DNA of 63,711 nucleotides, the filler included, from Octopus bimaculoides (lineage: Eukaryota): the NCBI RefSeq assembly GCF_001194135.2. It is 6 parts of 5 records of this genome, joined end to end, with 100 filler letters (N's around TTAATTAATTAA, not from the genome) between each part and the next. Parts side by side here need not be neighbours in the genome. Positions count along the whole stretch, not along the records: positions 56,960 to 63,711 come from NC_069009.1; 5 more parts are not named here. One strand, 5' to 3'. Position numbers and translations under genes: made by a program. Positions 16,781-63,711 of the stretch are shown piece after piece. Each line of letters begins with the position of its first letter. Position 1 is the stretch's first letter. The notes below the pieces were generated by a model. It ran no database searches and was not told the DNA's origin. It worked only from the letters and a program-made list of their open reading frames with translations.

Positions 16781-19107
16781 TTTTCTCCAACCCTCGGGCT
16801 TCTGTACATTCATTAGCTTATAATTCCATATCAGATGATTTTTTTGTCTCGTGGATCAGATCATTAATTACTCCGTATTACTGTGTCCTTTCCCTAAGCT
16901 GCTTATATCATCCTTCAGCTAACTTATTGACTTCTGTATACAATTACGGAGATATCTCATATCAGATTTCGAGATGCTTCTGTGAACAAAGACCTTAAAA
17001 ACAACACCAGAATGCAACCAGACAATTTACTCTCTTTCAACAACTGAGAGGCACATTAATTATACCTTTTGGGATTCTAGAAGAACGAAACTCTAAGTAG
17101 TTTTTCCCCCACACTCTAGAAAGAGCAATCAATTCTCCTTAAACCACACACTTCTTTATTTAAAAGGTCATAGCGGACAATATAGTTTGGAATAAAATAT
17201 TCCTTAGGCGAGATGGCCGCAGATTTAATGTTATTCATTGCAAATTTGCTCCATCAGGTATAAGCGAGTGAAAGAAAGTGAAAGTGAAAGAAGCCGTATT
17301 AGATAAGGAAACCTTGACTTTTAGAACTCATGTTTATAAAGAATAGTGCACATAACATAAAACTTAGATGTTAATCCCAACCAGATATAATGGACTAACA
17401 AGAACGGTCAGTGTATACTCGGAAAGCTTAGAATGAATTATGTAAAATGACGATAAATAACTGATGTAACAAAATAAATAACCTTCATTACATTCAATTT
17501 CAAGACAAAATCTGCGTTATATGATAATTTCGGCTTTATATATCGAGAGAAATTATACTTTCTCCATAAATATATAACAACTCAGAGATAAAGAATCATT
17601 TCTTTTTATGTACAGAAATAATTTAAGTAGCCAATATCAAAGCAGTCAACTTGGTGCAGACAAAATGTCATAAAAGTTTGGTTTTCTCCTCAGCTACATA
17701 CTTATTCATGGAAAAGAGAGCTAACCACTTATCGAAGTTGTTATGCTAAGACTTCTGTTCTTTCCTTAATGAAACAGGTCAAGTTATAATCTCAGAAGAG
17801 GACACTCAAATATCTTTGTATCGATGTTCTGAGAGTAAGTTGAGTGTCTTTGAATTCATACTTCCCCTCAACAGACAGCAATGTTCGACTACAAAATAAC
17901 TTTTGCATTACAAATTAAATTTGTCCTCATTAATTATTGTATTTACGTCAATGTATCTAATGGTGAGGGCAAATTCATTTATATTTATATTACTTCTATG
18001 CAATCGTTTCGGTCAAGATATATCTTCTGAGAAAATAAACCACCACATTATCACCTAGGAAATTATCTGCATAATGATGTAAATTGTTAATTAGTGTTAT
18101 AATCAGAATAGTTAGCGTTCTTTCGAAAATTCTATTTCACCATTTACCTGCTCCATGTAAAACTCTTTATTGAATTCATTTAAAGTGTATGTCTATATAC
18201 TCTACACTTAGAAACGTTCTTTGAATATTAAGAACTGTTGAGAAGAGGAGACAGCATTGCTTATATCCTTTTTTAAAGCCTTCATTACGAGTGAGAGAAA
18301 GAAACTGGGTTATCCTCGCACCCAAAATCTGGGAAAATCAAGACCAATGTGGTGATTTTAGACAAGCTGACATTAAATTTACCGTCTATTCCATGAGATT
18401 TTGTCCTTTAAATTTCACCTTAGTCGAAAGTGACACGCTGTGCCATCGAAACAGCAAACACCGCTGCTAAGCGAATATTTTAACCACACAATCCATTCGG
18501 TACCCAAGTTAATACATTTTCTCTCAGTGTATTCACTAAATATATTTCCACTTAAACCATCTGATTATTAAAAGAGTGAACATATGCATACATAAATAGC
18601 TGCACATTACTCATACATTCACTAATGTACATATACATACTTTTTTACAACTAGAAACAGATTACGTTACAGTATGATATATTCAACTCAGAAAATAGTT
18701 ATTACGTGCGAGCATATATATTCTATGGCAAATCCCTGAAAATTAACTGCATTTAGCGTCGATCTCTACTTTTTGGTCACCTGTTTTACCGAAGCCAGGA
18801 AAACATTCTGAGAAATTATCGATAGTAAAACAAAACAAAAATAAAACAGGAAAACTTCAATAAAAGGCTGAGTTTCTCTCGGTTTTCTGTGTCATTGTTT
18901 TATTCAAGATTTTCAATAAAACGTGATTTGTTTTTTAACATATGTTAATGTCATATAATTCACGTACAAGTCATGTATTGTTAGTTAATGAACGATTTAA
19001 AATATGATTAGTTTAATTACTTTAAATATGCTTTATGATATCTGAATGAGATGTGACATTATGTCTGTGACAAGTCTTTATGAAAATTGCTTTTTCAATA
19101 TGCCGTC

Positions 19108-27840: not shown

Positions 27841-29839
27841 ATTTCTCTGGAACTTATAAATTAAGCATCAGTCATGTTGTGGGAGTGATTTCCAGAGTCA
27901 ACTTTTCCTTTCTTCAAATTTTAAGGAATTGTGCTATGACGAAACCTTTAAAAAAACAGGCCAGTGAATCAACAAAAATAGTTAGACAAAATGCCACGTG
28001 GTATTCAACTCTCCAAGTTCAAATCCTATCAAAGTCAACTTTGCATTTCATTCTTTCGAGCTCTATAAAATAAGCATCATAGTATTTTGACTGTGTAGAT
28101 GTTTTAGAAGGAACCTCAACCAAAACAGGAATTGAAAATTACAGCGGAGAGTTATTTCCCTTCTGTAATGTTGTTCTTGCTTATCTCCCTTGAATCAATA
28201 TTCCCTCTGGTATATTTTCTTGGTGTAATTTTTTGTTCGATAATATCTGTGGTCTGTAGTTTAATGATAACTGAAACAAATTATAAATTTCATTCACATG
28301 CACAGAAAAACCTCGAACTTTTGTAAAAATGTTAATGATATGTGACACAAATTATAAATTTCGTTCACTTAAACAACAAAGCCGCGAACTTTTGTTGACG
28401 TTAATGTAATTAAATCGGTCCAATATAAAGATCCTCATCTGTTAACGAAAACATTAAAAAACCCAGCTTGCTGGATATTAAACGAATACAAAAACAAAGA
28501 TTTGTGCAAACGAACCTGAATTGGAGGGGGGGGGGGACTTTCAGAAAATCCACAAGATCCGATTTTTCCCTCATAACTTTCAAGAAAATGGATATATATT
28601 GACTTTTTTTTACGGAATCCCACGTTTTCGGCTATGGAGAATCCGATTCTGGAAATTTTTTTTCAAAAATCGCAAATTCAAAATTTTAAAAGGGCTTGCT
28701 GTTGTATCTTCACTCATATTTTTTGTAACTTTCAAAAAAAAATAAATAAATAAAAAAGAACACTTTAATTTCACATGAATTACTTTGTCATATTATTGTT
28801 GGAAATTACTCTGAAAAAAAAAAAAATCATTGCAGAAACGTAAGTGGATTGATTACATATTTCTTTCATTATGTTATCGTAGTTTTATGAGATTTGGCTG
28901 TTATTTCTAGCATGTGGATAGCCTTCTTGAAGGCCAAGGCCAAAGAATTGAGAGGGGAGGGTGTTGGAGTTTTTTGTTTTTTTTTCAGCATGTATCCATT
29001 TTCCTGAAGGTTGTGAGGGAAAGATTGGATCTTGTGAAATTTCCGAAAGTCCTCACTCCCTCTCCAGGTTCATTTGTGCAATTTTTTTTTCATATTAGTT
29101 TTCTACACAGTTGTTAACACCCAGCAGGCTGGTTTTTGTTTTGTTTTCATTAATGGGTGAGAATCTTTATATTGACCATTAAATCTATTCAAGTACCTGT
29201 CTTATACATATATAGTTGGATAGGTTGTATTCCATCTAATGTGACTACTCAGAAGGCTGTAATATCATTTGACAAGAACACAGTATAAAGAAGTACATGG
29301 AACAAGGTGGTAACTTTAAATGTCTTTAATGCTGGCCATGCGTATATATACAAGCTGAATGATAAATGGAAATGTTTGATGGACAGTTGATGTCCTGAAA
29401 AAACGTTTCTTGTTCTTTTCGTCACATTTGCAACAGTTCTCTAACTGTGACAACTTAATGACTGACATATATTACAAATGACAGAGCATTTTGTTCAATT
29501 TCCTTAAAACAGCAAGTAAATCTTCCTAATAACACGCTCTACTTTTTGTGGATAATGTTGTTCTTAATATACTGGTGTAATGGCAACAGCTGGGATGCTT
29601 CTGAAGATAATTCTACTCAACCTTGGCTGAAACAACAACAGTTGTAACCCATGAACTACTTTACATGGTCGGTCATTCTGCGAGAAATAGCTGCCAAATA
29701 TTCCTCAAATCATATCCAACTGTCTTAACAGATACTGGATAATATCATAGATACTATGTCAGATGGGACGGTCAAGATTTGAACACCTTTCACTACAGTT
29801 CTATTCATAATGGCTGCACCAAACTGGTAGATAAGTGAG

Positions 29840-30740: not shown

Positions 30741-32813
30741 ACTTAATTCTGTTTCTTCACTCCAGTAATAAAGTAGTTTCATAACTACATCCCCTGTTTC
30801 TCTATATAGTTAATTACCTATTGGAGACAGCCAAATCTCCCTCAAACCACACATTACCATCTTAAATATTTCATTATTGGTTAAGAGTAACAGAAAGAGC
30901 TGTGCTCATGTCATTTGCAGGGCTTACTTAAACAAGTGAAATTGAGTCTGTTAATGTGTAACTTGTTGTAAACTGATGACGACAGGGAAAAGAATAAAGA
31001 AAGGTATTTCAACAACGATCCCATTATACAAAAAGATAATGTGTGTGTGTGTGTGCATAGATAGATAGATAGATATAACATATAATCCATCATCATCAGG
31101 TAAAATTTTAAACAGCTGAGATATCTTACATGAACCTGAACAAATTCAGTATCAGTTGGATCAGTGGCTCATTCAGATTTAACATTCTAATATATAGAAG
31201 AATTCTCTCATATATATGGTCTGCAACATAAAGTGCATGAAGGGGGACTATAAGAACCAGAATACAACGTACATTGAGGAGACTTCTAGGAGTTTAGCAG
31301 AGAGACTAAATGTACATTGATGGAAGTATGATGACAGGTAACAGTTGGCTCAGTCAGCATGCCAGAGATCAACATAGTGACATGCTGAGCCAAATCAGCA
31401 TCAATATTTTGTCTAAACACCTGAGAGACCCATCACTTTGACAGATACACATGTCTGTTCTTATAAATGAGACATTAATAGTACTGAATAGAAAATAACC
31501 ATAGTAGACGGCAGAACTATAACACCACTGTTACCACTCACTCGTTATTCATATACGGATGCATCTATGTGGCAGGCATGCATGTGGTGGTATAGGCAAG
31601 TATATAGGGTTAGAATGACAGCAGGGTGCATGAAAATTTACACAAATAAATATATTTAAATAGGTACTATTCTAATACACATTCATACACATCCATGCTC
31701 ACACTCATGTGCAAGCACATAGATATATGTAGGTACAGATGAAGTAGGAGTGGAATGACAGTAGGATACAAGGAATTCCAAACAAATAAATATGTGTAGT
31801 AATGAACAATTCTAATACACATCCACATGCATGTGCTGACAGGCACACACACACACACACGAACATACAGACACAAACACATGCACACACATACACAAAA
31901 CACAGACACACACTGCAACACAAGCATACACACCACACATATACATGTACATGCATACGCTCACACTAACAAGTACAGGCACATGTACACACAGACATGC
32001 ACAAGCACATGCAAATATGAATCCATGGGAACACATGCATACACACAGATGCTTACTTATTTTTAAAAAACCCATCAGACCACATGCATACTGAAATGCA
32101 CTCCCATAAGCAAACACTCACATGTTCACACACACACACACACACACAGAACTGATTCAACCACATGAATACACAAACTTAAACACACTCACACATGCAT
32201 GTGCACACCCATCCACACCCACACACATGTACAGGTGCATGTAGATGCTCACACATACACCTACCAATGTTAGGAACTACACCCATAAATCTTTATGGGA
32301 AGACAAGCAATATCCCAGCAGATCTGAGACCAAGCTAATCTTGAACAAAAGGTTGAACCCTTAGAGGGGTCATGGATGGCTAATGCTCACACACTCACAA
32401 ACTCACATACAAAGCAGTCATGTTGGTGTACACAAACAACACACACGAACATGCGCATACACACAGAAACTTTTCTTTTACTCAAACCCTTACTTTCTCT
32501 TCTAAGCAAACACACACCTATGTATAGACACACACAGGGATACATACAATTCTCAGAGCAGATCTTGAAGAGAGAGGACAAGTTATTGAAAAGGTTGCGA
32601 AGAACTACAAAAGGACTCTTACAAAGAAACAACTGTTCGATTGTTTAACTAGCATTTTGAAGAAGTGATAGTGAACCAGTGCATGTTATTGTTATTGGTG
32701 TAATAGCCTACACCCCCAAGATGCAACAAAATTGACTTCAGCATAAGAATTCACATCAAGAATCTTGCAAACCAAATACAAAAATGAAGTGTGTATATAT
32801 ATATATATATATC

Positions 32814-56860: not shown

Positions 56861-57104
56861 NNNNNNNNNNNNNNNNNNNNNNNNNNNNNNNNNNNNNNNN
56901 NNNTTAATTAATTAANNNNNNNNNNNNNNNNNNNNNNNNNNNNNNNNNNNNNNNNNNNNTATATGTATGCATGCATGCATGTCTCTGCTAATTGTTTTAA
57001 TTATTATAAATCTTTTGCTGAGGAGGGAGCCAGTTTCCAACAAAGATACAAGGCTCCATCTTTGGGATGCAGTTAACACAGAACAATTCACACATGTATG
57101 TATG

Positions 57105-57410
57105 TATGTGCTGATGTTCCGGAAAACATTATCACGGAAGAAAGTGAAGAGAATCGTAGATCAAGTGGCGGGCAAAGAACGCAACGGATGGACAATATCG
57201 AATGCTAGTCGGATAAGAGTAGCATGGTCACTAGAGAATTCGCGCTTTCGTTGTGATGTCATCAACGCGCAGCAGGCGTGCGATAAAATGGCGACGACAA
57301 CGGCGAATGTCCTGACTGCTGACGCATAAAGACAAGGAATTTATTCCATGCTGCCACAATTCTGTAACATTGTATTCCGCGCCAAAATAGTTTAACAACC
57401 GCCGAACAGT
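57105..57410. promoter_or_regulatory. Promoter-like CpG-rich block
   Basis: Unique CpG-rich island with TTCCGGAA (57117), AAAATGGCGAC (YY1/Kozak-like, 57285) and CGCGCCAAA (E2F-like, 57378). Motif matches only. Confidence 0.35.
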
Positions 57411-57692
57411 TGAGCTTTCCCCCCCCCCCTTCTTCTTTGGAAATGAGGTTAATTAGTTATATATNNNNNNNNNNNNNNNNNNNNNNNNNNNNNNNNNNNN
57501 NNNNNNNNNNNNNNNNNNNNNNNNNNNNNNNNNNNNNNNNNNNNNNNNNNNNNNNNNNNNNNNNNNNNNNNNNNNNNNNNNNNNNNNNNNNNNNNNNNNN
57601 NNNNNNNNNNNNNNNNNNNNNNNNNNNNNNNNNNNNNNNNNNNNNNNNNAAAAAATCAAAAGGCCTTTTTTTCTTTCTAAGTGATAGGCGCA

Positions 57693-57984
57693 GGCGTGGC
57701 TTGACAGAAACGTTGGCACGCAGGGCGAAATGCTTAGCGGTATTTCGTCTGCCGTTACGTTCCGAGTTCAAATTCCGCTGAGGTCGACTTTGCCTTTCGT
57801 CCTTTCGGGGTTGATAAATTAAGTACCAGTTACCATCGACTTAATCCCCTTGTCTGTCCTTGTTTGTCCCCTCTATGTTTAGCCCCTTGTGGGCAATAAA
57901 GAAATAAGAAACGTTAGCACGCCGGGCGAAATGCTTAGCGGTATTTCGTCTGCCGTTACGTTCTGAGTTCAAATTCCGCCGAGG
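57693..57984 (+). mobile_element. SINE family A tandem (full copy plus a second head)
   Basis: The tail aataaagaaata is followed directly by agaaacgttagcacgccggg...aattccgccgagg. Confidence 0.93.
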
Positions 57985-60115
57985 GAAATTTGGTTGCTGT
58001 TTCTAGCATAGTCTACCGAGTAGGTAGAAGCTAGCCTCGGTTTTTCATCTTAAGACAGTAGAGAGCAGGGAGAGATTTAGCTGCTATTTCTAATTTAATC
58101 TACTGAGTACGAGAAGCGGACTTCGTTTTTTTTTCTCGTCTTAAAACGATAGAGATTTGAGGGAAATTTTGGCTGCTATTTCTAGCATGAAATAGCTGCT
58201 ATTTCTATTGAATACGTAGAAGCTAACCTCATCTTTTCGAGTCTTAGCGAAGTCAAGGAAATTTTGGCTGCTATTTCTAGTATGGTTTAACTCTGTATGT
58301 AAAGGCTAGCTGCGACCTTTCGCTCTAAGATTATAAGAGGTTTTTAAGGTTTGGCTGGTATTTCTAACGTGTCTATCGACCACGCGGTGGCACGCCCTTC
58401 TCCGTTCCACGTAGTCCTTAGTAGCCATGCTAGAAATAACTGTTAAATCCCCCTCAAATCACAACTTCTGTTCAAGGAACCAGCAAGTAGAGCCCCCAAG
58501 TAGTCGGTAATAGCACTACTAGTAACAGCAGCCAAATCTCCCTCAAATTATATCACATATCATTTAAAAAGGAGTCGGGGAGTATGGCTTCCACGTGGTC
58601 AGTAGACATGCTAGTTATAGCAGCCAAATTTCCCTCCGATTTTATCCTTCACTGGAGCTAAAGAAAAGGCTCACACCTGGTCGGTAATCATGCTAGTAAT
58701 AACAGCCAAATCTCTTTACTGTCTCAAAGCCTTAGAGTGGGGCTTACATGAGGACTGAGAAATACGAGATATAGCAGCTAAATTTCCCTCAAATGACAGC
58801 CTACAGTCTCATAAAGAAGTCCTGGAGTGGTGCCTACACAAGGACCTAAGACATGCTAATAATAGCAGCCAAATCTCCTTTCTTAAAAGGTATCGGGGAC
58901 GTGGCCAGCGGACATGCTAGTTATAGCAGCTAAATATCCCTCAGATCATAGACTTCTATCTCAAAAAGAAGTTTCGGAATTGGGCCTACACGAGGACCCG
59001 ATACATGCTAGTAATAGTAGTCAAATCTCCCTCAAATGATACCCTACATTCTCAAAAAGAAGTCATGGAGTGGAGTCAACAGGAGGACCCGAGAAATGCT
59101 AGTTATAGCAGCCAAATCTCCCTCAAATAATACCCTACACTCTCAAAAAGAAGTCATGGAGTAGAGCCAGCATGGGAACCCAAGAGATGCTAGTTATAGC
59201 AGCCAAATTNNNNNNNNNNNNNNNNNNNNNNNNNNNNNNNNNNNNNNNNNNNNNNNNNNNNNNNNNNNNNNNNNNNNNNNNNNNNNNNNNNNNNNNNNNN
59301 NNNNNNNNNAATACCCTACACTCTCAAAAAGAAGTCATGGAGTAGAGCCAGCATGGGAACCCAAGAGATGCTAGTTATAGCAGCCAAATTTCTCTCAAAT
59401 GATACCCTACACTCTCAAAAAGAAGTCATGGAGTAGAGCCAACATGGGGGTCCAAGAAATGCTAGTTATAGCAGCTAAATCTCTCTCAAATGACGCTCTA
59501 CTTCCTTAAAAGGAACCTAGGAGTGAAACCTTTATGTGGCCAGTGGACATGCTAGTTATAGCAGCCAAATCTCTCAGATTACATCATTTCCAGTTTAAGA
59601 AGGAACTAGGAGGCTCCACCTGGTCGGCAGACAAATTGTTACAACAGCCAAATCGTTTTTAAATTACATTCTTTTGTCTCAAGAAGAAGTATCGTAGTAG
59701 GGCCCACACGTGGTCGGTAAACATGCTGTAATAGCAGTAAAATTTCCCTCAATTTACATAATTTCTTGTTTAAAAAGGAACCAAGCAGTGGAGGCTCCAC
59801 GTGGTCGGTGGACGTATTAGTAATAACAGTCAAATCTCCCTCAAATTATACCCTACGATTTTAAAAAGAAGTCTTGAAGTAGGGTCGATACGAGGTCGGT
59901 AGTCATGCTAGTAATAAGAGCCAAATTCCCTTCAAATTACATCCTACTGTCTGAACCTGAAGTCTAGGAATTTGACCTACACGAGGTCTACAGTCGTGCT
60001 AGTCGTAATAGTCAAATCTCCCTCAAATTACATCGTATTACCTAAAAAGGAACCGAGGTGGGAGGCACTGTCAGCACGTGGTCGGTAGACTTGCTAGAAA
60101 TAGTAGTCAATACTC
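57981..60115. repeat. Satellite array A, ~90-bp unit; 5 units in reverse orientation, then at least 19 forward
   Basis: The core ATGCTAG(T/A)(T/A)ATAGCAGCCAAATCTCCCTCAAAT recurs about every 90 bp from 58428 to 60110; its reverse complement recurs from 57981 to 58390. Confidence 0.93.
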
Positions 60116-60504
60116 CTTTCTCAGTCACCGATCGAACCTGGAAAACCGAGGTAGCTACGTTTCCATTAGAGTTTTCCATTTTTTTCTTTTTTTTTTTTTT
60201 TGCAAATGGCTACTACTAATTCTTCAGTAGCAACTCCTCGTAGAAGAAGAATTACCGTTTCCCACCAATAACACGCCGATAACTTTGGTACGATTTGAAC
60301 GCACAACGCAGACAGTCGGCAGAAACAGGCTGTGAGGTAATCTAGCAGACGTTCTTAACCATCCTGCTATTTCGCCGACTTCGTTCTGCTACTAAATTAG
60401 CGAAGCATGCGTTCGCAGTAGACATATGATCAAAGATATTCCTGCCAGCACCATATAAATGGATGTACATGTGCGTCTGTCATATCTGTCTGTCTTTCTC
60501 TGTC

Positions 60505-60539
<35 letters not shown>

Positions 60540-60548
60540 GTCTGACTG

Positions 60549-60585
<37 letters not shown>

Positions 60586-60809
60586 TTTTTTCTCGATCCC
60601 TTTTGATCGAACTCCTCCCTTTTTCCCTTCCTACGATCCCTTTTGGTCAACACCCCACTACTTTTTTTTCCCTTTCCCCTCCCAAAAAGAAAAGCTCTAC
60701 ATTGTATTTGTCCCATCTTTGTTGAGCCCTGTGTGGCTAATAAAAGAAATGTATCTATCTACCTACCTACCTATCTATCTATCTCTCTATCTATCTATCA
60801 AACTATATA

Positions 60810-60856
<47 letters not shown>

Positions 60857-60871
60857 ATATACATACACATT

Positions 60872-60917
<46 letters not shown>

Positions 60918-61119
60918 CATTTAATTATACATGTATATATGTCTGTGTGTGTGTAGGTATATTTATATATATGTATATATATGTATGTGTGTGTGTGTTT
61001 AAATTAACGAAGAAAGCTTTACGTGGTTCCTCGATATGCTAAAAATAACAGCAAAATCATTTTTATAATCACATCCTACCATCTATATATATATATATAT
61101 ATATATAAAAGAACCACTG

Positions 61120-63310
61120 AAGGGCACATTGGAAATTACACTCCTAGATACATAATGCCTGAATACAAGAAAATATAGTCACAGCTGAAGCATCTTTGAC
61201 CTAACCTGACTAAATAAGAACAACTATAGCCACTAATACAAACTACTATATGATACATTAGTTAATGTAGTCCTAGATACACTATGTCCGGTTAAAAGGT
61301 AGGATAGTCATAGGTCTACAGGATCAAGATTGACCTGGGGCTAAAAACGATAATAGCTATACAATACATTAGAAAATGTGGTCTTAGATACACTATGACC
61401 GAATAAAAGGCGGGATGGTCACGGCTGGACCATATTTGATCATAGGTCTGTTAGATCAAGATTGACCTGGGGCTAAAAACAACAATAGCTACTAATACTA
61501 ACTGCTATACAATACATTAAGAAATGTAGTCTTAGATGCACTATGACCGAATAAAAGGCGGGATGGTCACGGCTGGACCATCTTTGATGATAGGTCTGCT
61601 GGATCAAGATTGACCTAGGGTTAAACAACAACAAAGAAGACGACAATGGCTTCAAGAAGAAAAGAGATGGAATCTCACCTATGTAGCTCCTTATTCAAGT
61701 CACCTTGTATACCTATCAGGCAACGAACTACCCGCTCCCTCCACGCCTCCCCAAGCTGAAACTCTGCGCCGCCATCGCTGCCCCGTTTGCGTAGCGACGG
61801 CGGCGTGCAGGCGAGATTACTGTCCTGCTATGCGAGAAATAGCAGTCAAATCTCCTTGGAATCACAAACTACGGAGAAAAAAAATATGAAAGAAAGAACG
61901 AAAGAAATGAAGGAAGAAAGGAGGCGATAACATTCCACTAATGTAGTCCTAGATACATTCTTCCTATACCAATGACAGGATGGTCATGCTTGGAGCAACT
62001 TTGACAATAGTTTTGTTCTTTAAAAACTGGCCTGAGATAAACAGCTATAGCCATTGTACATTCTGCAATGAATAAAAGGCGGGTGAGTCACAACTGGAAC
62101 ATATTTGATCATAGGTCTACTGGATAAGGACTGACCTAGGGTTAAACAAGAATAGCTATAGTCACTAATACTAACTACTATACTGTACATAAGATGATGT
62201 AGTCCTAGATACACTATGTCTGGATATATGACAAGACGGTCCTGGCTGGAACGTCTTGGATCAGAGGTCTACTGGATCAGGACTGACCTGGTGTTAAACA
62301 GCTACATGCTCCAGTACTAAGTGATATTCATTAGATAATGTAGTTCTAAGATTATCATGTCAGAATATAAAACGCGATGGTCACGGCGGGAACGTCTTTG
62401 AACATATATCTGCAAGATCAGGACTAACCAGGGGCGAAAAAAAAAAACTACAGCGTCCTAATACTAACTAAGACACTGTACATTAGATAATGTAGTCCTA
62501 GATATATTGTGGCTGAATAAAAGATGAGATAGCTACAGCTGGACCATTTTTGATCATAGGTCTACAGGATCACGACTGACCTGGGGCTAAAGAACAACTA
62601 TATGCACCGATATAAGGTACTGTACATTAGATCATGTAGTCCTAGATACACTATGACGGCATAAAAGGCTGTATGTTCATAGCTGGAATATCTCCGATCA
62701 TAGGTCTACTGGACCACGACTGACCTGGGGCTAAACAAACAACTTAGCCACTAATACTATCTACTATACTATACATTAGATAATGGAGTCCTAGATACAC
62801 TATGTCTGAATAAAAGGTGGGATGGTCGCAAGTGGAACATCTCTGATCATGGGTCTACTGGGTTAGCACTGACCTGGGGTTAAAAGGCAATGATATGCTC
62901 TAATACAAAGCACTACACATTAGATAATGTCGTCCAAGGTACACTATGCCTCAATTAAAGGCGGGATAGTCGCAAGTGATCATGGGTCTACTGGATCAGG
63001 ACAGACCTGGGGTTAAACGGCAATGACATGCTCTAATACAAAGCACTACACATTAGATAATGTCGTTCAAGGTACACTATGCCTCAACAAAAGGCGGGAT
63101 GGTCACAAGTGGAACATCTCTGATCATAGGTCTGCAAGAACAAGACTTGCCTAGAGCTAAACAACAACAACAACAGCTATAGCCCCTGTACTAACTTCTA
63201 CACTACACATTATGGTGTAATCCTTGATAACAATGTCTGGTCAAAAGGCGGTGGTGTGGTCAGAACTGGTCTGAGGATCAAGTTTGACCTAGGGCTAAGC
63301 AATAATAGCA
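61120..63310 (+). repeat. Satellite array B, ~145-bp unit, ~14 diverged copies
   Basis: TACATTAGATAATGTAGTCCTAGATACACTATG...GGGATGGTCAC...TGATCATAGGTCTACTGGATCA...GACCTGGGGCTAAACAAC recurs. Confidence 0.93.
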
Positions 63311-63417
63311 ACAACAACAACAATAATGATAACTAACAATAGCAACAATGTACATAACATCGCACCAGCGTCAGCGAGTGTGCGCACCACGGTCGTCATC
63401 GCCTCTGGCAGACTTAC

Positions 63418-63711
63418 CTGCAAAAGGGAGGGTGAGTTTTCGAAGTAGGCCCAAAAATTGTGTGTTGTAGCGGTCCAACAGTAAAGACTGTATGAGAAGC
63501 TCATTCATATTACTCGGGGGGGTTGGAAGAGGGCTGGGCCGCGGCGGCGCGGAGGCGAGGCGAGGCGGAGAAGGAGGGATGGAGAGAAAGAGAGAGAGAG
63601 AGATAGAGAGAGGGAGAAAGAGAGAGGATGCAGCGGCGGCGGCACGTTGAAGGGGAAACAGAGACAGAAATAAAAGGGGGCAGTGGAGAGAGAGAGAGAG
63701 AAAACAAGGGG
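63418..63711 (-). other. Candidate first exon / 5' UTR of a minus-strand gene
   Basis: CT- and GCC-rich leader, ATGs at 63508 and 63504 with frames open to a consensus donor CAG|GTAAGT at 63418/63417. The product is not recognised. Confidence 0.35.

What the first reader, a model, noticed from the sequence alone, without database searches (positions are those of the whole stretch)
57981..63310. Two neighbouring satellites appear to be the separately amplified halves of one dispersed repeat
Single dispersed copies in this window join module A (ctagaaatagcagccaaatctccctcaaatcac) directly to module B (acattggataatgtagtcctagatacact...gggatggtcac...). Examples: 29665-29790, 17125-17225, 61020-61230, 61795-62000, and partly 11105-11200 and 30828-30910. 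Here module A alone forms a ~90-bp array (at least 24 units) and module B alone forms a ~145-bp array (~14 units), in the parental A-then-B order, with intact A+B copies at the boundary and inside array B. Units are strongly diverged, so the arrays are old yet retained, and they lie between two promoter-like blocks. I infer a bipartite, SINE-derived tandem regulatory or RNA-scaffold locus rather than an ordinary satellite.
Basis: partly seen in the sequence, partly recalled or inferred. Interest (0 to 1): 0.72.

Follow-up and report, generated by a model that had tools for sequence, protein, structure and literature searches.

The report
Two repeat arrays from one element
Two decayed tandem-repeat arrays sit side by side, and each is built from one of two adjoining parts of the same short repeated element; this is an ordinary way for repeat arrays to arise, with no sign of a regulatory or RNA role.

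Summary
The arrays are real. Array A has a ~91-bp unit. About 20 lie on the plus strand (58407-60122). Array B has a ~144-149-bp unit: 14 plus-strand units in two blocks (61127-61637 and 61933-63306).

A and B consensus sequences are unrelated. Twice in the piece (61033-61254 and 61826-62055) a full A unit runs straight into a B unit at the same B position. So A and B are adjoining parts of one composite element. I could not check whether the element is dispersed, because the rest of the window is masked and no genome or read tool was available.

The N gap lies inside array A. The 81 nt before it and the 81 nt after it are identical, so the array continues in register but the unit count there is unknown.

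Nothing supports the other claims:
- SINE origin: no tRNA, 7SL or 5S match and no pol III boxes.
- RNA scaffold: no conserved fold.
- Regulatory role: no supporting evidence.

The arrays are separated by about 900 bp of other repeats and microsatellites. Both show homogenised interiors, degenerate edges and CpG depletion. Best reading: neutral tandem arrays derived from a repeated element, a known kind (squamate sSats, oyster Cg_HINE with two consecutive arrays). Low interest.

The parts
57706..57984 (+). Neighbouring dispersed repeat R1. One copy lies at 57706-57908. A second copy of its first 78 nt follows at 57907-57984 and is cut off by the inverted A units. R1 is not part of the A/B element; it marks the left edge of array A.
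   Evidence: Local alignment shows 95% identity over 78 nt. The sequence was read.
57981..58406 (-). Array A, inverted block: five ~87-95-nt units on the minus strand. They form a distinct sub-family, about 50% identical to the plus-strand units and about 60% to each other.
   Evidence: A-HMM hits on the minus strand have E-values from 3e-7 to 8e-13. Inverted-repeat pairs I1-I18. Identity matrix.
58407..60122 (+). Array A, direct block: about 20 units of ~91 nt, including two part-units at the gap and a truncated last unit at 60088-60122. The interior (58759-59456) is homogenised at 75-91% identity; the edges are degenerate.
   Evidence: TRF; unit list; alignment and consensus; HMM E-values down to 1e-22; identity matrix.
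59210..59309 (.). Assembly gap inside array A. The 81 nt on each side (59129-59209 and 59310-59390) are identical.
60123..61002 (.). Spacer that separates array A from the A-to-B junction. Contents: T-run 60179-60201 with a retroposon-like repeat on the minus strand (~60202-60400); an inverted 40-nt B fragment at 60416-60455; (GTCT)n at 60475-60583; an R1 tail fragment at 60707-60750; and (TATC)n, (TA)n and (TAGA)n at 60752-60996.
   Evidence: All Rfam hits here are sub-threshold matches of microsatellite hairpins to miRNA models.
61003..61126 (+). Junction copy 1, A part. A possible tail of one A unit lies at 61003-61032. It is followed by a full A unit at 61033-61126, whose middle is replaced by (TA)12.
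   Evidence: A-HMM hit 61033-61084, E 8e-4. End-to-end alignment to consA+consB. The upstream part-unit is only suggestive (p=0.09).
61127..61637 (+). Array B, block 1: four units, the first being the B part of junction copy 1. The block ends in an AAC-rich run.
   Evidence: B-HMM E-values from 4e-11 to 2e-44; phased alignment.
61638..61825 (.). Unique 190-bp segment X that interrupts array B. GC is 55% and CpG observed/expected is 1.0. It has no significant similarity elsewhere in the piece.
61826..61932 (+). Junction copy 2, A part: the A core at 61828-61872 followed by an AG-rich expansion.
   Evidence: A-HMM E 2e-8; alignment.
61933..63306 (+). Array B, block 2: ten units of 128-157 nt, the first being the B part of junction copy 2. 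Mean pairwise identity is 72%. The pair 62773/62917 is 83-89% identical.
   Evidence: TRF; B-HMM; identity matrices.
63307..63352 (+). CAA/AAC-rich tail and a remnant of the B linker, which fade into unique sequence.
   Evidence: Read directly from the sequence. Block 1 ends in the same (AAC)n run.

Best explanation
This is a decaying, non-functional cluster of tandem repeats that grew out of a short composite repeated element. The element has a ~91-nt module A followed directly by a ~145-nt module B.

Shown:
- A and B are unrelated in sequence.
- They are joined A-then-B, at the same B position, in two copies in this locus.
- Each module also forms its own head-to-tail array.
- Interior units are more alike than edge units.
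- The edge units and the junction copies keep one shared sequence state.
- The arrays are CpG-poor.
- The arrays have been cut by a ~900-bp stretch of other repeats and microsatellites, by a 190-bp unique segment, and by an inversion of five A units.

Inferred:
- Each module was first duplicated locally by replication slippage or unequal exchange. Short direct repeats may have seeded this: 'ACAT' stands at the A start (GACATGCTAG), at the B start (ACATTAG) and just after the last B unit.
- The arrays then grew and were partly homogenised by unequal crossing-over.
- After that they drifted.

The class of the parent element (SINE, Helitron-like or other) remains open.
For: - Arrays and unit counts.
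- A and B consensus sequences are unrelated in both orientations (score at or below the shuffle mean).
- The only two A hits at E<=0.001 outside array A each lie directly upstream of a B unit. Those two B units lack the usual inter-B linker.
- Interior A units are 75-91% identical and the gap flanks 100%, against an overall mean of 61%. Adjacent B units are 75% identical, against 69-72% at longer lags.
- Edge units and junction copies carry 'GAAATAG...AATCAC', whereas interior units carry 'GTTATAG/GTAATAG...AATGAT/AATTAC'.
- CpG observed/expected is 0.36-0.57 in the arrays, against 0.9-1.35 in the flanks.
- No conserved RNA fold. No known RNA family.
- The pattern 'tandem units with a longer terminal unit that continues into the rest of the source element' is the one described for SINE-derived satellites (PMC10702118).
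- Seeding by short direct repeats is the published model for minisatellite birth inside repeated elements (PMC6947457).
Against: - The dispersed nature of the composite could not be tested here: the window is masked and no genome, read or relative could be obtained.
- The 'ACAT' direct repeats are only 4 nt long and could be chance.
- The ~30-nt linker between B units is absent from both junction copies, and its origin is unexplained.
- The 35-nt A core is clearly better conserved (about 0.8) than the rest of the unit (0.5-0.6). This could reflect constraint rather than faster CpG decay in the variable part.
- Two (A)n(B)m blocks in the same order could equally be two copies of a mobile element that carries both arrays.
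Confidence: 0.68

Rival explanations
1. The (A)n-(B)m architecture is the internal tandem-repeat region of a non-autonomous mobile element, of the kind seen in oyster Cg_HINE/pearl, clam DTC84 and Drosophila DINE-1 or Tetris. The locus then holds two such elements in tandem: one with about 25 A and 4 B units, and one with 1 A and 10 B units. The single A+B copies the reader saw elsewhere would be the minimal form, and the arrays travel with the element.
For: - Two blocks have the same A-then-B order, orientation and junction.
- Both B blocks end at the same B position, in an (AAC)n run.
- A (GTCT)n microsatellite lies about 450 bp upstream of the first junction. GTCY microsatellites upstream of the central repeats are a hallmark of these elements, and some carry two unrelated arrays 'in a consecutive order' (PMC7492417).
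- The B unit length (144-149 bp) and the short array length fit the central repeats described there.
Against: - No 11-nt (at most 1 mismatch) or 9-nt exact inverted match links the candidate left flank (60123-60480, also 57650-57990 and 61638-61830) to the right flank (63290-63480).
- There is no palindrome of 6 bp or more in the right flank.
- The microsatellite sits between array A and array B rather than upstream of both.
- The stretch between it and the junction holds unrelated repeat fragments.
- Element ends cannot be defined from one locus.
Confidence: 0.22
2. One reading: the locus is kept by selection as a regulatory array or as a structured or scaffold RNA. For example, the 35-nt A core, repeated about 25 times at 91-bp spacing, could act as a cluster of protein-binding sites or as a small-RNA source, near a possible first exon on the minus strand.
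For: - The A core is markedly better conserved than the rest of the unit.
- The locus lies next to a GC-rich block holding a candidate first exon with a perfect CAG|GTAAGT donor.
Against: - No fold is more stable than shuffles, and there is no conserved or covarying pair.
- No Rfam family matches.
- The arrays are CpG-depleted, interrupted by insertions, partly inverted and variable in unit length (61-157 nt).
- The candidate exon has no homologue and no domain.
- No expression, accessibility or orthology data could be obtained.
Confidence: 0.06
3. Assembly artefact: the arrays, or their lengths, were produced by mis-assembly of dispersed copies.
For: The piece has two N gaps. One gap is flanked by 81 identical nt, as expected for unmerged or collapsed contig ends.
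Against: Most units differ from one another by 10-50% and have individual indels, so they assemble uniquely. Only the unit number at the gap is in doubt.
Confidence: 0.04

Closest known systems
SINE-derived satellites (sSats) of squamate reptiles (Vassetzky et al. 2023, PMC10702118)
   Same: - Tandem arrays are built from a portion of a short dispersed element.
- A terminal unit continues into the rest of the element.
- Arrays are short and poorly homogenised.
- Different portions of the element give different arrays.
   Different: Here two different portions are amplified side by side at one locus. The SINE nature of the source is not shown: no pol III head, no target-site duplication.
Oyster Cg_HINE elements with two consecutive central arrays (Cg_HINE_10_13 and _11_12; Vojvoda Zeljko et al. 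2020, PMC7492417), and the related pearl and DTC84 elements (PMC3879986)
   Same: - Two unrelated satellite-like arrays stand in a fixed consecutive order.
- Units are about 150 bp and arrays are short.
- A GTCY-type microsatellite lies nearby.
- The setting is gene-proximal and euchromatic.
   Different: The defining subterminal inverted repeats and 3' palindrome were searched for and not found. The microsatellite lies between the arrays rather than upstream of both.
Minisatellite birth inside repeated elements by slippage between short direct repeats (the Haber and Louis model as reviewed in PMC6947457); also Tetris and DINE-TR1 in Drosophila
   Same: - Part of an element is duplicated in place and then extended by unequal exchange.
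- A short direct repeat ('ACAT') stands at the module boundaries.
   Different: The direct repeats here are only 4 nt long, and their role is inferred rather than shown.
PcH-Sat of the limpet Patella caerulea, proposed to derive from a Nin-SINE (PMC11121367, seen in the listing only)
   Same: A satellite derived from a short dispersed element.
   Different: I did not read the paper beyond its title and abstract, and I made no sequence comparison.

Membership tests
Tandem array derived from a dispersed element (sSat-type) | Array units are homologous to a defined portion of a composite or dispersed element. | tested here: met
   A units match the A part, and B units the B part, of both junction copies.
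Tandem array derived from a dispersed element (sSat-type) | A terminal unit of the array continues into the adjoining part of the source element. | tested here: met
   At 61033-61254 an A unit, preceded by a possible part A unit, runs into B. At 61826-62055 it does the same.
Tandem array derived from a dispersed element (sSat-type) | The source element is dispersed in many single copies across the genome. | not testable with these tools
   The rest of the window is N. Public collection scans gave only chance matches.
SINE | [quoted passage not shown] | tested here: not met
   No tRNA. No Rfam match at E<=10 over 61000-62320. Box A and box B matches do not exceed chance and none lies in an A core.
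SINE | A 3' tail (A-rich or simple repeat) and target-site duplications. | tested here: inconclusive
   Both B blocks end in an (AAC)n-like run. Mollusc SINEs often end in (CA)n or (CAAA)n (PMC4758252). No direct repeat flanks block 2 apart from that run.
HINE / non-autonomous Helentron with central repeats | Inverted subterminal repeats of 11-12 nt in the left and right flanks. | tested here: not met
   No inverted match between any candidate left flank and 63290-63480.
HINE / non-autonomous Helentron with central repeats | [quoted passage not shown] | tested here: not met
   No hairpin with a stem of 6 bp or more in 63290-63480 or 61600-61830.
HINE / non-autonomous Helentron with central repeats | A microsatellite (often GTCY) upstream of the central repeats, followed by a variable spacer of 10-500 bp. 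| tested here: inconclusive
   (GTCT)n at 60475-60583 lies about 450 bp upstream of junction copy 1. It is downstream of array A, and unrelated repeat fragments lie in between.
HINE / non-autonomous Helentron with central repeats | Insertion at TT without target-site duplication, with empty sites elsewhere in the genome. | not testable with these tools
   No genome access.
Classical satellite DNA | Long, homogeneous, abundant arrays, usually in heterochromatin. | tested here: not met
   The arrays span about 2.1 kb and 1.9 kb. Mean unit identity is 61% for A and 72% for B. Unique sequence lies within 400 bp. Genome abundance is unknown.
Structured non-coding RNA | A fold more stable than chance, and conserved or covarying base pairs among copies. 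| tested here: not met
   Fold z-scores run from -1.46 to +0.99. RNAalifold predicts 0 pairs for 20 A units and for 13 B units.

The most novel reading that the evidence does not exclude
A and B are the two internal repeat modules of an undescribed mobile element family that carries tandem repeats and seeds paired A/B arrays at many loci. In this reading the well-conserved 35-nt A core is a cis-acting site, for transposition or for a DNA-binding protein, rather than neutral sequence.
Probability: 0.12. Interest if true: 0.4.

Novelty: new member of a known kind. Interest (0 to 1): 0.15.

Why it matters
The locus has little importance on its own. It is a tidy example of two adjoining parts of one short repeated element each seeding its own tandem array at the same locus, with the parental junction still visible. 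That could be useful for annotating repeats in this genome and as an illustration of how satellites are born. It would matter more only if a genome-wide survey showed that the paired arrays recur with defined termini, which would indicate a new element family carrying tandem repeats. It would also matter more if the arrays turned out to be conserved or transcribed.

Tried and rejected
- Other copies of the element in public DNA collections:
  - An 18-mer of B in metagenome contigs gave 5 hits, none extended by the A or B HMM.
  - An A-core 24-mer in genome contigs gave 0 hits.
  - A degenerate B 21-mer in genome contigs gave 11 bacterial hits, each matching only the pattern itself.
  - In viral contigs the A pattern gave 0 hits and the B pattern 1 chance hit.
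- Other copies through spurious ORFs in the protein collection: a consensus B-frame query gave no hit. Looking up the 120-aa ORF at the left edge gave nothing.
Five ORFs gave no Pfam hit above the curated cut-off.
- Literature search by sequence strings returned only unrelated primer matches. No paper on cephalopod or octopus satellites turned up.
- Idea that the ~30-nt linker between B units is a degenerate A core, which would make array B a tandem of whole elements: rejected. The A HMM finds nothing in array B even at E<=100, and the consensus comparison scores below the shuffle mean.
- Idea that the A tail and the B tail form terminal inverted repeats: rejected.
- Idea that segment X duplicates the right flank: rejected. 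Only an 18-nt GC-rich match was found.
- Idea that the spacer splits a single A unit cleanly: only suggestive (p=0.09).
- The Rfam 'miRNA' hits at 60746-60991 are far below gathering scores. They come from complementary microsatellites.
- The bacterial promoter and terminator scanner was not used, because it does not apply to a eukaryotic locus.


Full report
SCOPE. Only 56960-63711 is real sequence. Everything before it is N plus a 12-nt artificial linker. No expression, population or copy-number data could be brought in.

ARRAY A. Tandem Repeats Finder reports period 91 at 58911-59208 (82% matches), 59311-59493 (92%) and 59818-60034 (75%). A single-sequence search, then a profile HMM built from the aligned units, recover 25 units or part-units between 57957 and 60122. 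E-values reach 1e-22. The 91-nt consensus is GACATGCTAGTAATAGCAGCCAAATCTCCCTCAAATTACATCCTACATTCTTAAAAAGAAGTCTAGGAGTAGAGCCTACACGTGGTCGGTA.

They stand head to head with about 20 plus-strand units (58407-60122). The repeat finder lists 18 inverted pairs between the two blocks. The minus-strand units form a sub-family of their own: about 50% identical to plus-strand units and about 60% to each other. On the left they abut a truncated second copy of an unrelated dispersed repeat, R1 (57907-57984).

Mean pairwise identity of A units is 61%. The interior units (58759-59456) are 75-91% alike. The rest of the unit is at 0.5-0.6.

THE GAP. The 100 N at 59210-59309 lie inside array A. The 81 nt before the gap (59129-59209) are identical to the 81 nt after it (59310-59390). 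Both sides are therefore the same unit in the same register. Merging them gives a perfect 91-nt period, whereas the nominal 100 N gives 181 nt for two units. Either the two contig ends overlap and there is one unit fewer than drawn, or an unknown number of near-identical units was collapsed. The array is continuous in either case. No reading frame is involved.

ARRAY B. TRF reports periods 144-152, a weak 293-nt double period, and a 91%-identical pair at 62844-63111. The unit HMM finds 14 plus-strand units: four at 61127-61637 and ten at 61933-63306. E-values reach 2e-44. The consensus, phased from ACATT, is ACATTAGATAATGTAGTCCTAGATACACTATGTCTGAATAAAAGGCGGGATGGTCACAGCTGGAACATCTTTGATCATAGGTCTACTGGATCAAGACTGACCTGGGGCTAAACAACAAC followed by a ~25-30-nt linker, GCACTAATACTAACTACTATACTAT. 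Mean identity is 72%. The first unit of each block and the last unit are the most divergent. Both blocks end at the same unit position, in an (AAC)n-like run. A 40-nt piece of B also lies in inverted orientation at 60416-60455 (E 3e-6).

ARE A AND B PARTS OF ONE ELEMENT? The two consensus sequences show no similarity in either orientation. Local alignment scores are at or below the mean of 500 shuffles. They are different modules.

Outside array A, the A profile gives only two hits at E<=0.001: 61033-61084 (E 8e-4) and 61828-61872 (E 2e-8). Each lies directly upstream of a B unit. These are also the only two B units not preceded by the usual linker. Both stretches (61033-61254 and 61826-62055) align end to end with consA followed by consB. 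A full A unit, with its middle replaced by (TA)12 in one copy and by an AG-rich run in the other, is followed by B starting at ACATT.

So within this piece A and B are adjoining parts of one composite, in A-then-B order, joined at the same point twice. This confirms the core of the observation, with one difference: the 35-nt core is not joined directly to B in these copies.

LAYOUT OF THE LOCUS, in order:
- R1 and a part-copy of R1
- five A units on the minus strand
- about 20 A units on the plus strand
- a ~900-bp spacer
- about 1.5 A units
- four B units
- unique segment X (190 bp)
- one A unit
- ten B units
- an AAC/CAA-rich tail
- unique GC-rich sequence

The spacer (60123-61002) holds a T-run with a retroposon-like repeat on the minus strand, the inverted B fragment, (GTCT)n, an R1 tail fragment and mutually complementary (TATC)n/(TA)n/(TAGA)n runs. 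These runs explain every Rfam hit in the piece. All are miRNA models scoring far below their gathering thresholds. The arrays are therefore not neighbours in the strict sense. The simplest reading is that later insertions and microsatellite growth split a once continuous A array from its junction with B. A part A unit just upstream of the junction copy is suggestive only (p=0.09).

- SINE origin. There is no tRNA. No Rfam family matches the junction region at E<=10, and none matches the neighbouring repeats. Box A and box B consensus matches do not exceed chance. No target-site duplication was found. Only the (AAC)n tail is compatible with a SINE, since mollusc SINEs often end in such simple repeats (PMC4758252).
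- RNA scaffold. Consensus and real units fold no better than dinucleotide shuffles, with z from -1.46 to +0.99. RNAalifold predicts no pair for 20 A units or for 13 B units.
- Regulatory role. This cannot be tested here. The arrays are CpG-depleted (observed/expected 0.36-0.57, against about 0.9-1.35 in the flanks). Unit length varies from 61 to 157 nt. The arrays are inverted in part and interrupted.
- 'Old yet retained'. This is only half right. The edges are old, but the interior of array A holds units that are 91-100% identical.

MOST LIKELY ORIGIN. The features are those of arrays that grow and homogenise by unequal exchange:
- The interior is homogenised and the edges are degenerate.
- Edge units and junction copies share the state 'GAAATAG...AATCAC', whereas interior units carry derived states.
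- Adjacent units are more alike than distant ones.

A terminal unit that runs on into the rest of the source element is the pattern described for SINE-derived satellites in squamates (PMC10702118). The tetranucleotide ACAT stands at the A start, at the B start and just after the last B unit. This fits the published model in which short direct repeats seed the first duplication (PMC6947457). I mark that step as inference.

MAIN RIVAL. The (A)n(B)m structure may be the internal repeat region of a mobile element. [quoted passage not shown] The presence here of two (A)n(B)m blocks and a (GTCT)n run is reminiscent of that. However, the defining subterminal inverted repeats and 3' palindrome were searched for and not found. 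I do not file the locus as a HINE.

KNOWN OR NEW. Tandem arrays born from parts of dispersed elements are well documented, including elements with two different consecutive arrays. I found no description of these particular sequences. That is weak evidence, because no repeat library was available. The source organism could not be identified with the tools. I class the locus as a new member of a known kind, of low interest unless a genome-wide survey shows a defined new element family or evidence of function.

Noticed in passing
window 59129-59209 and 59310-59390: The 81 nt on each side of the N gap are identical. This looks like an unmerged contig overlap or a collapse of identical units. The nominal gap length of 100 is probably meaningless.
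   Followed up: yes
window 63416-63508, minus strand: A candidate first coding exon: an ATG, then 31 codons (MNELLIQSLLLDRYNTQFLGLLRKLTLPFAG), ending at a perfect CAG|GTAAGT splice donor. The sequence upstream of it (63509-63711) is rich in GC and GA. If the exon is real, both arrays lie in its first intron. No homologue and no Pfam domain were found.
   Followed up: partly
window 57706-57984 and 60707-60750: An unrelated dispersed repeat, R1, about 203 bp long. It is followed at once by a second copy of its first 78 nt (95% identical), which is cut off by the inverted A units. A fragment of the R1 tail lies in the spacer. It gave no Rfam or tRNA match.
   Followed up: partly
window 60179-60400, minus strand: A retroposon-like repeat ending in an A-run, seen as a T-run at 60179-60201 on the plus strand. 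It lies right after the truncated last A unit. Parts of it look tRNA-like by eye (GGCGAAATAGCAGGATGG...GTTCAAATC), but no tRNA model matches.
   Followed up: partly
window 60416-60455: A 40-nt fragment of the B unit (unit positions ~75-113) in inverted orientation, just upstream of (GTCT)n. It scores beyond all shuffles. Its origin is unexplained.
   Followed up: partly
window 60752-60917: (TATC)n, (TA)n and (TAGA)n lie in a row and are mutually complementary. They form a long AT-rich hairpin, which accounts for the sub-threshold miRNA matches in Rfam.
   Followed up: yes
window 57981-60122 (A units, positions 1-36 of each): The 35-nt A core is much better conserved among units (about 0.8 per column) than the remaining 55 nt (0.5-0.6). 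The variable part contains the CpG sites of the unit, so faster CpG decay may explain this. Constraint on the core is not excluded.
   Followed up: partly
window 61638-61825: A 190-bp segment, GC-rich with CpG not depleted, sits between the two B blocks. It has no similarity elsewhere in the piece apart from an 18-nt GC-rich match. Its origin is unknown.
   Followed up: partly
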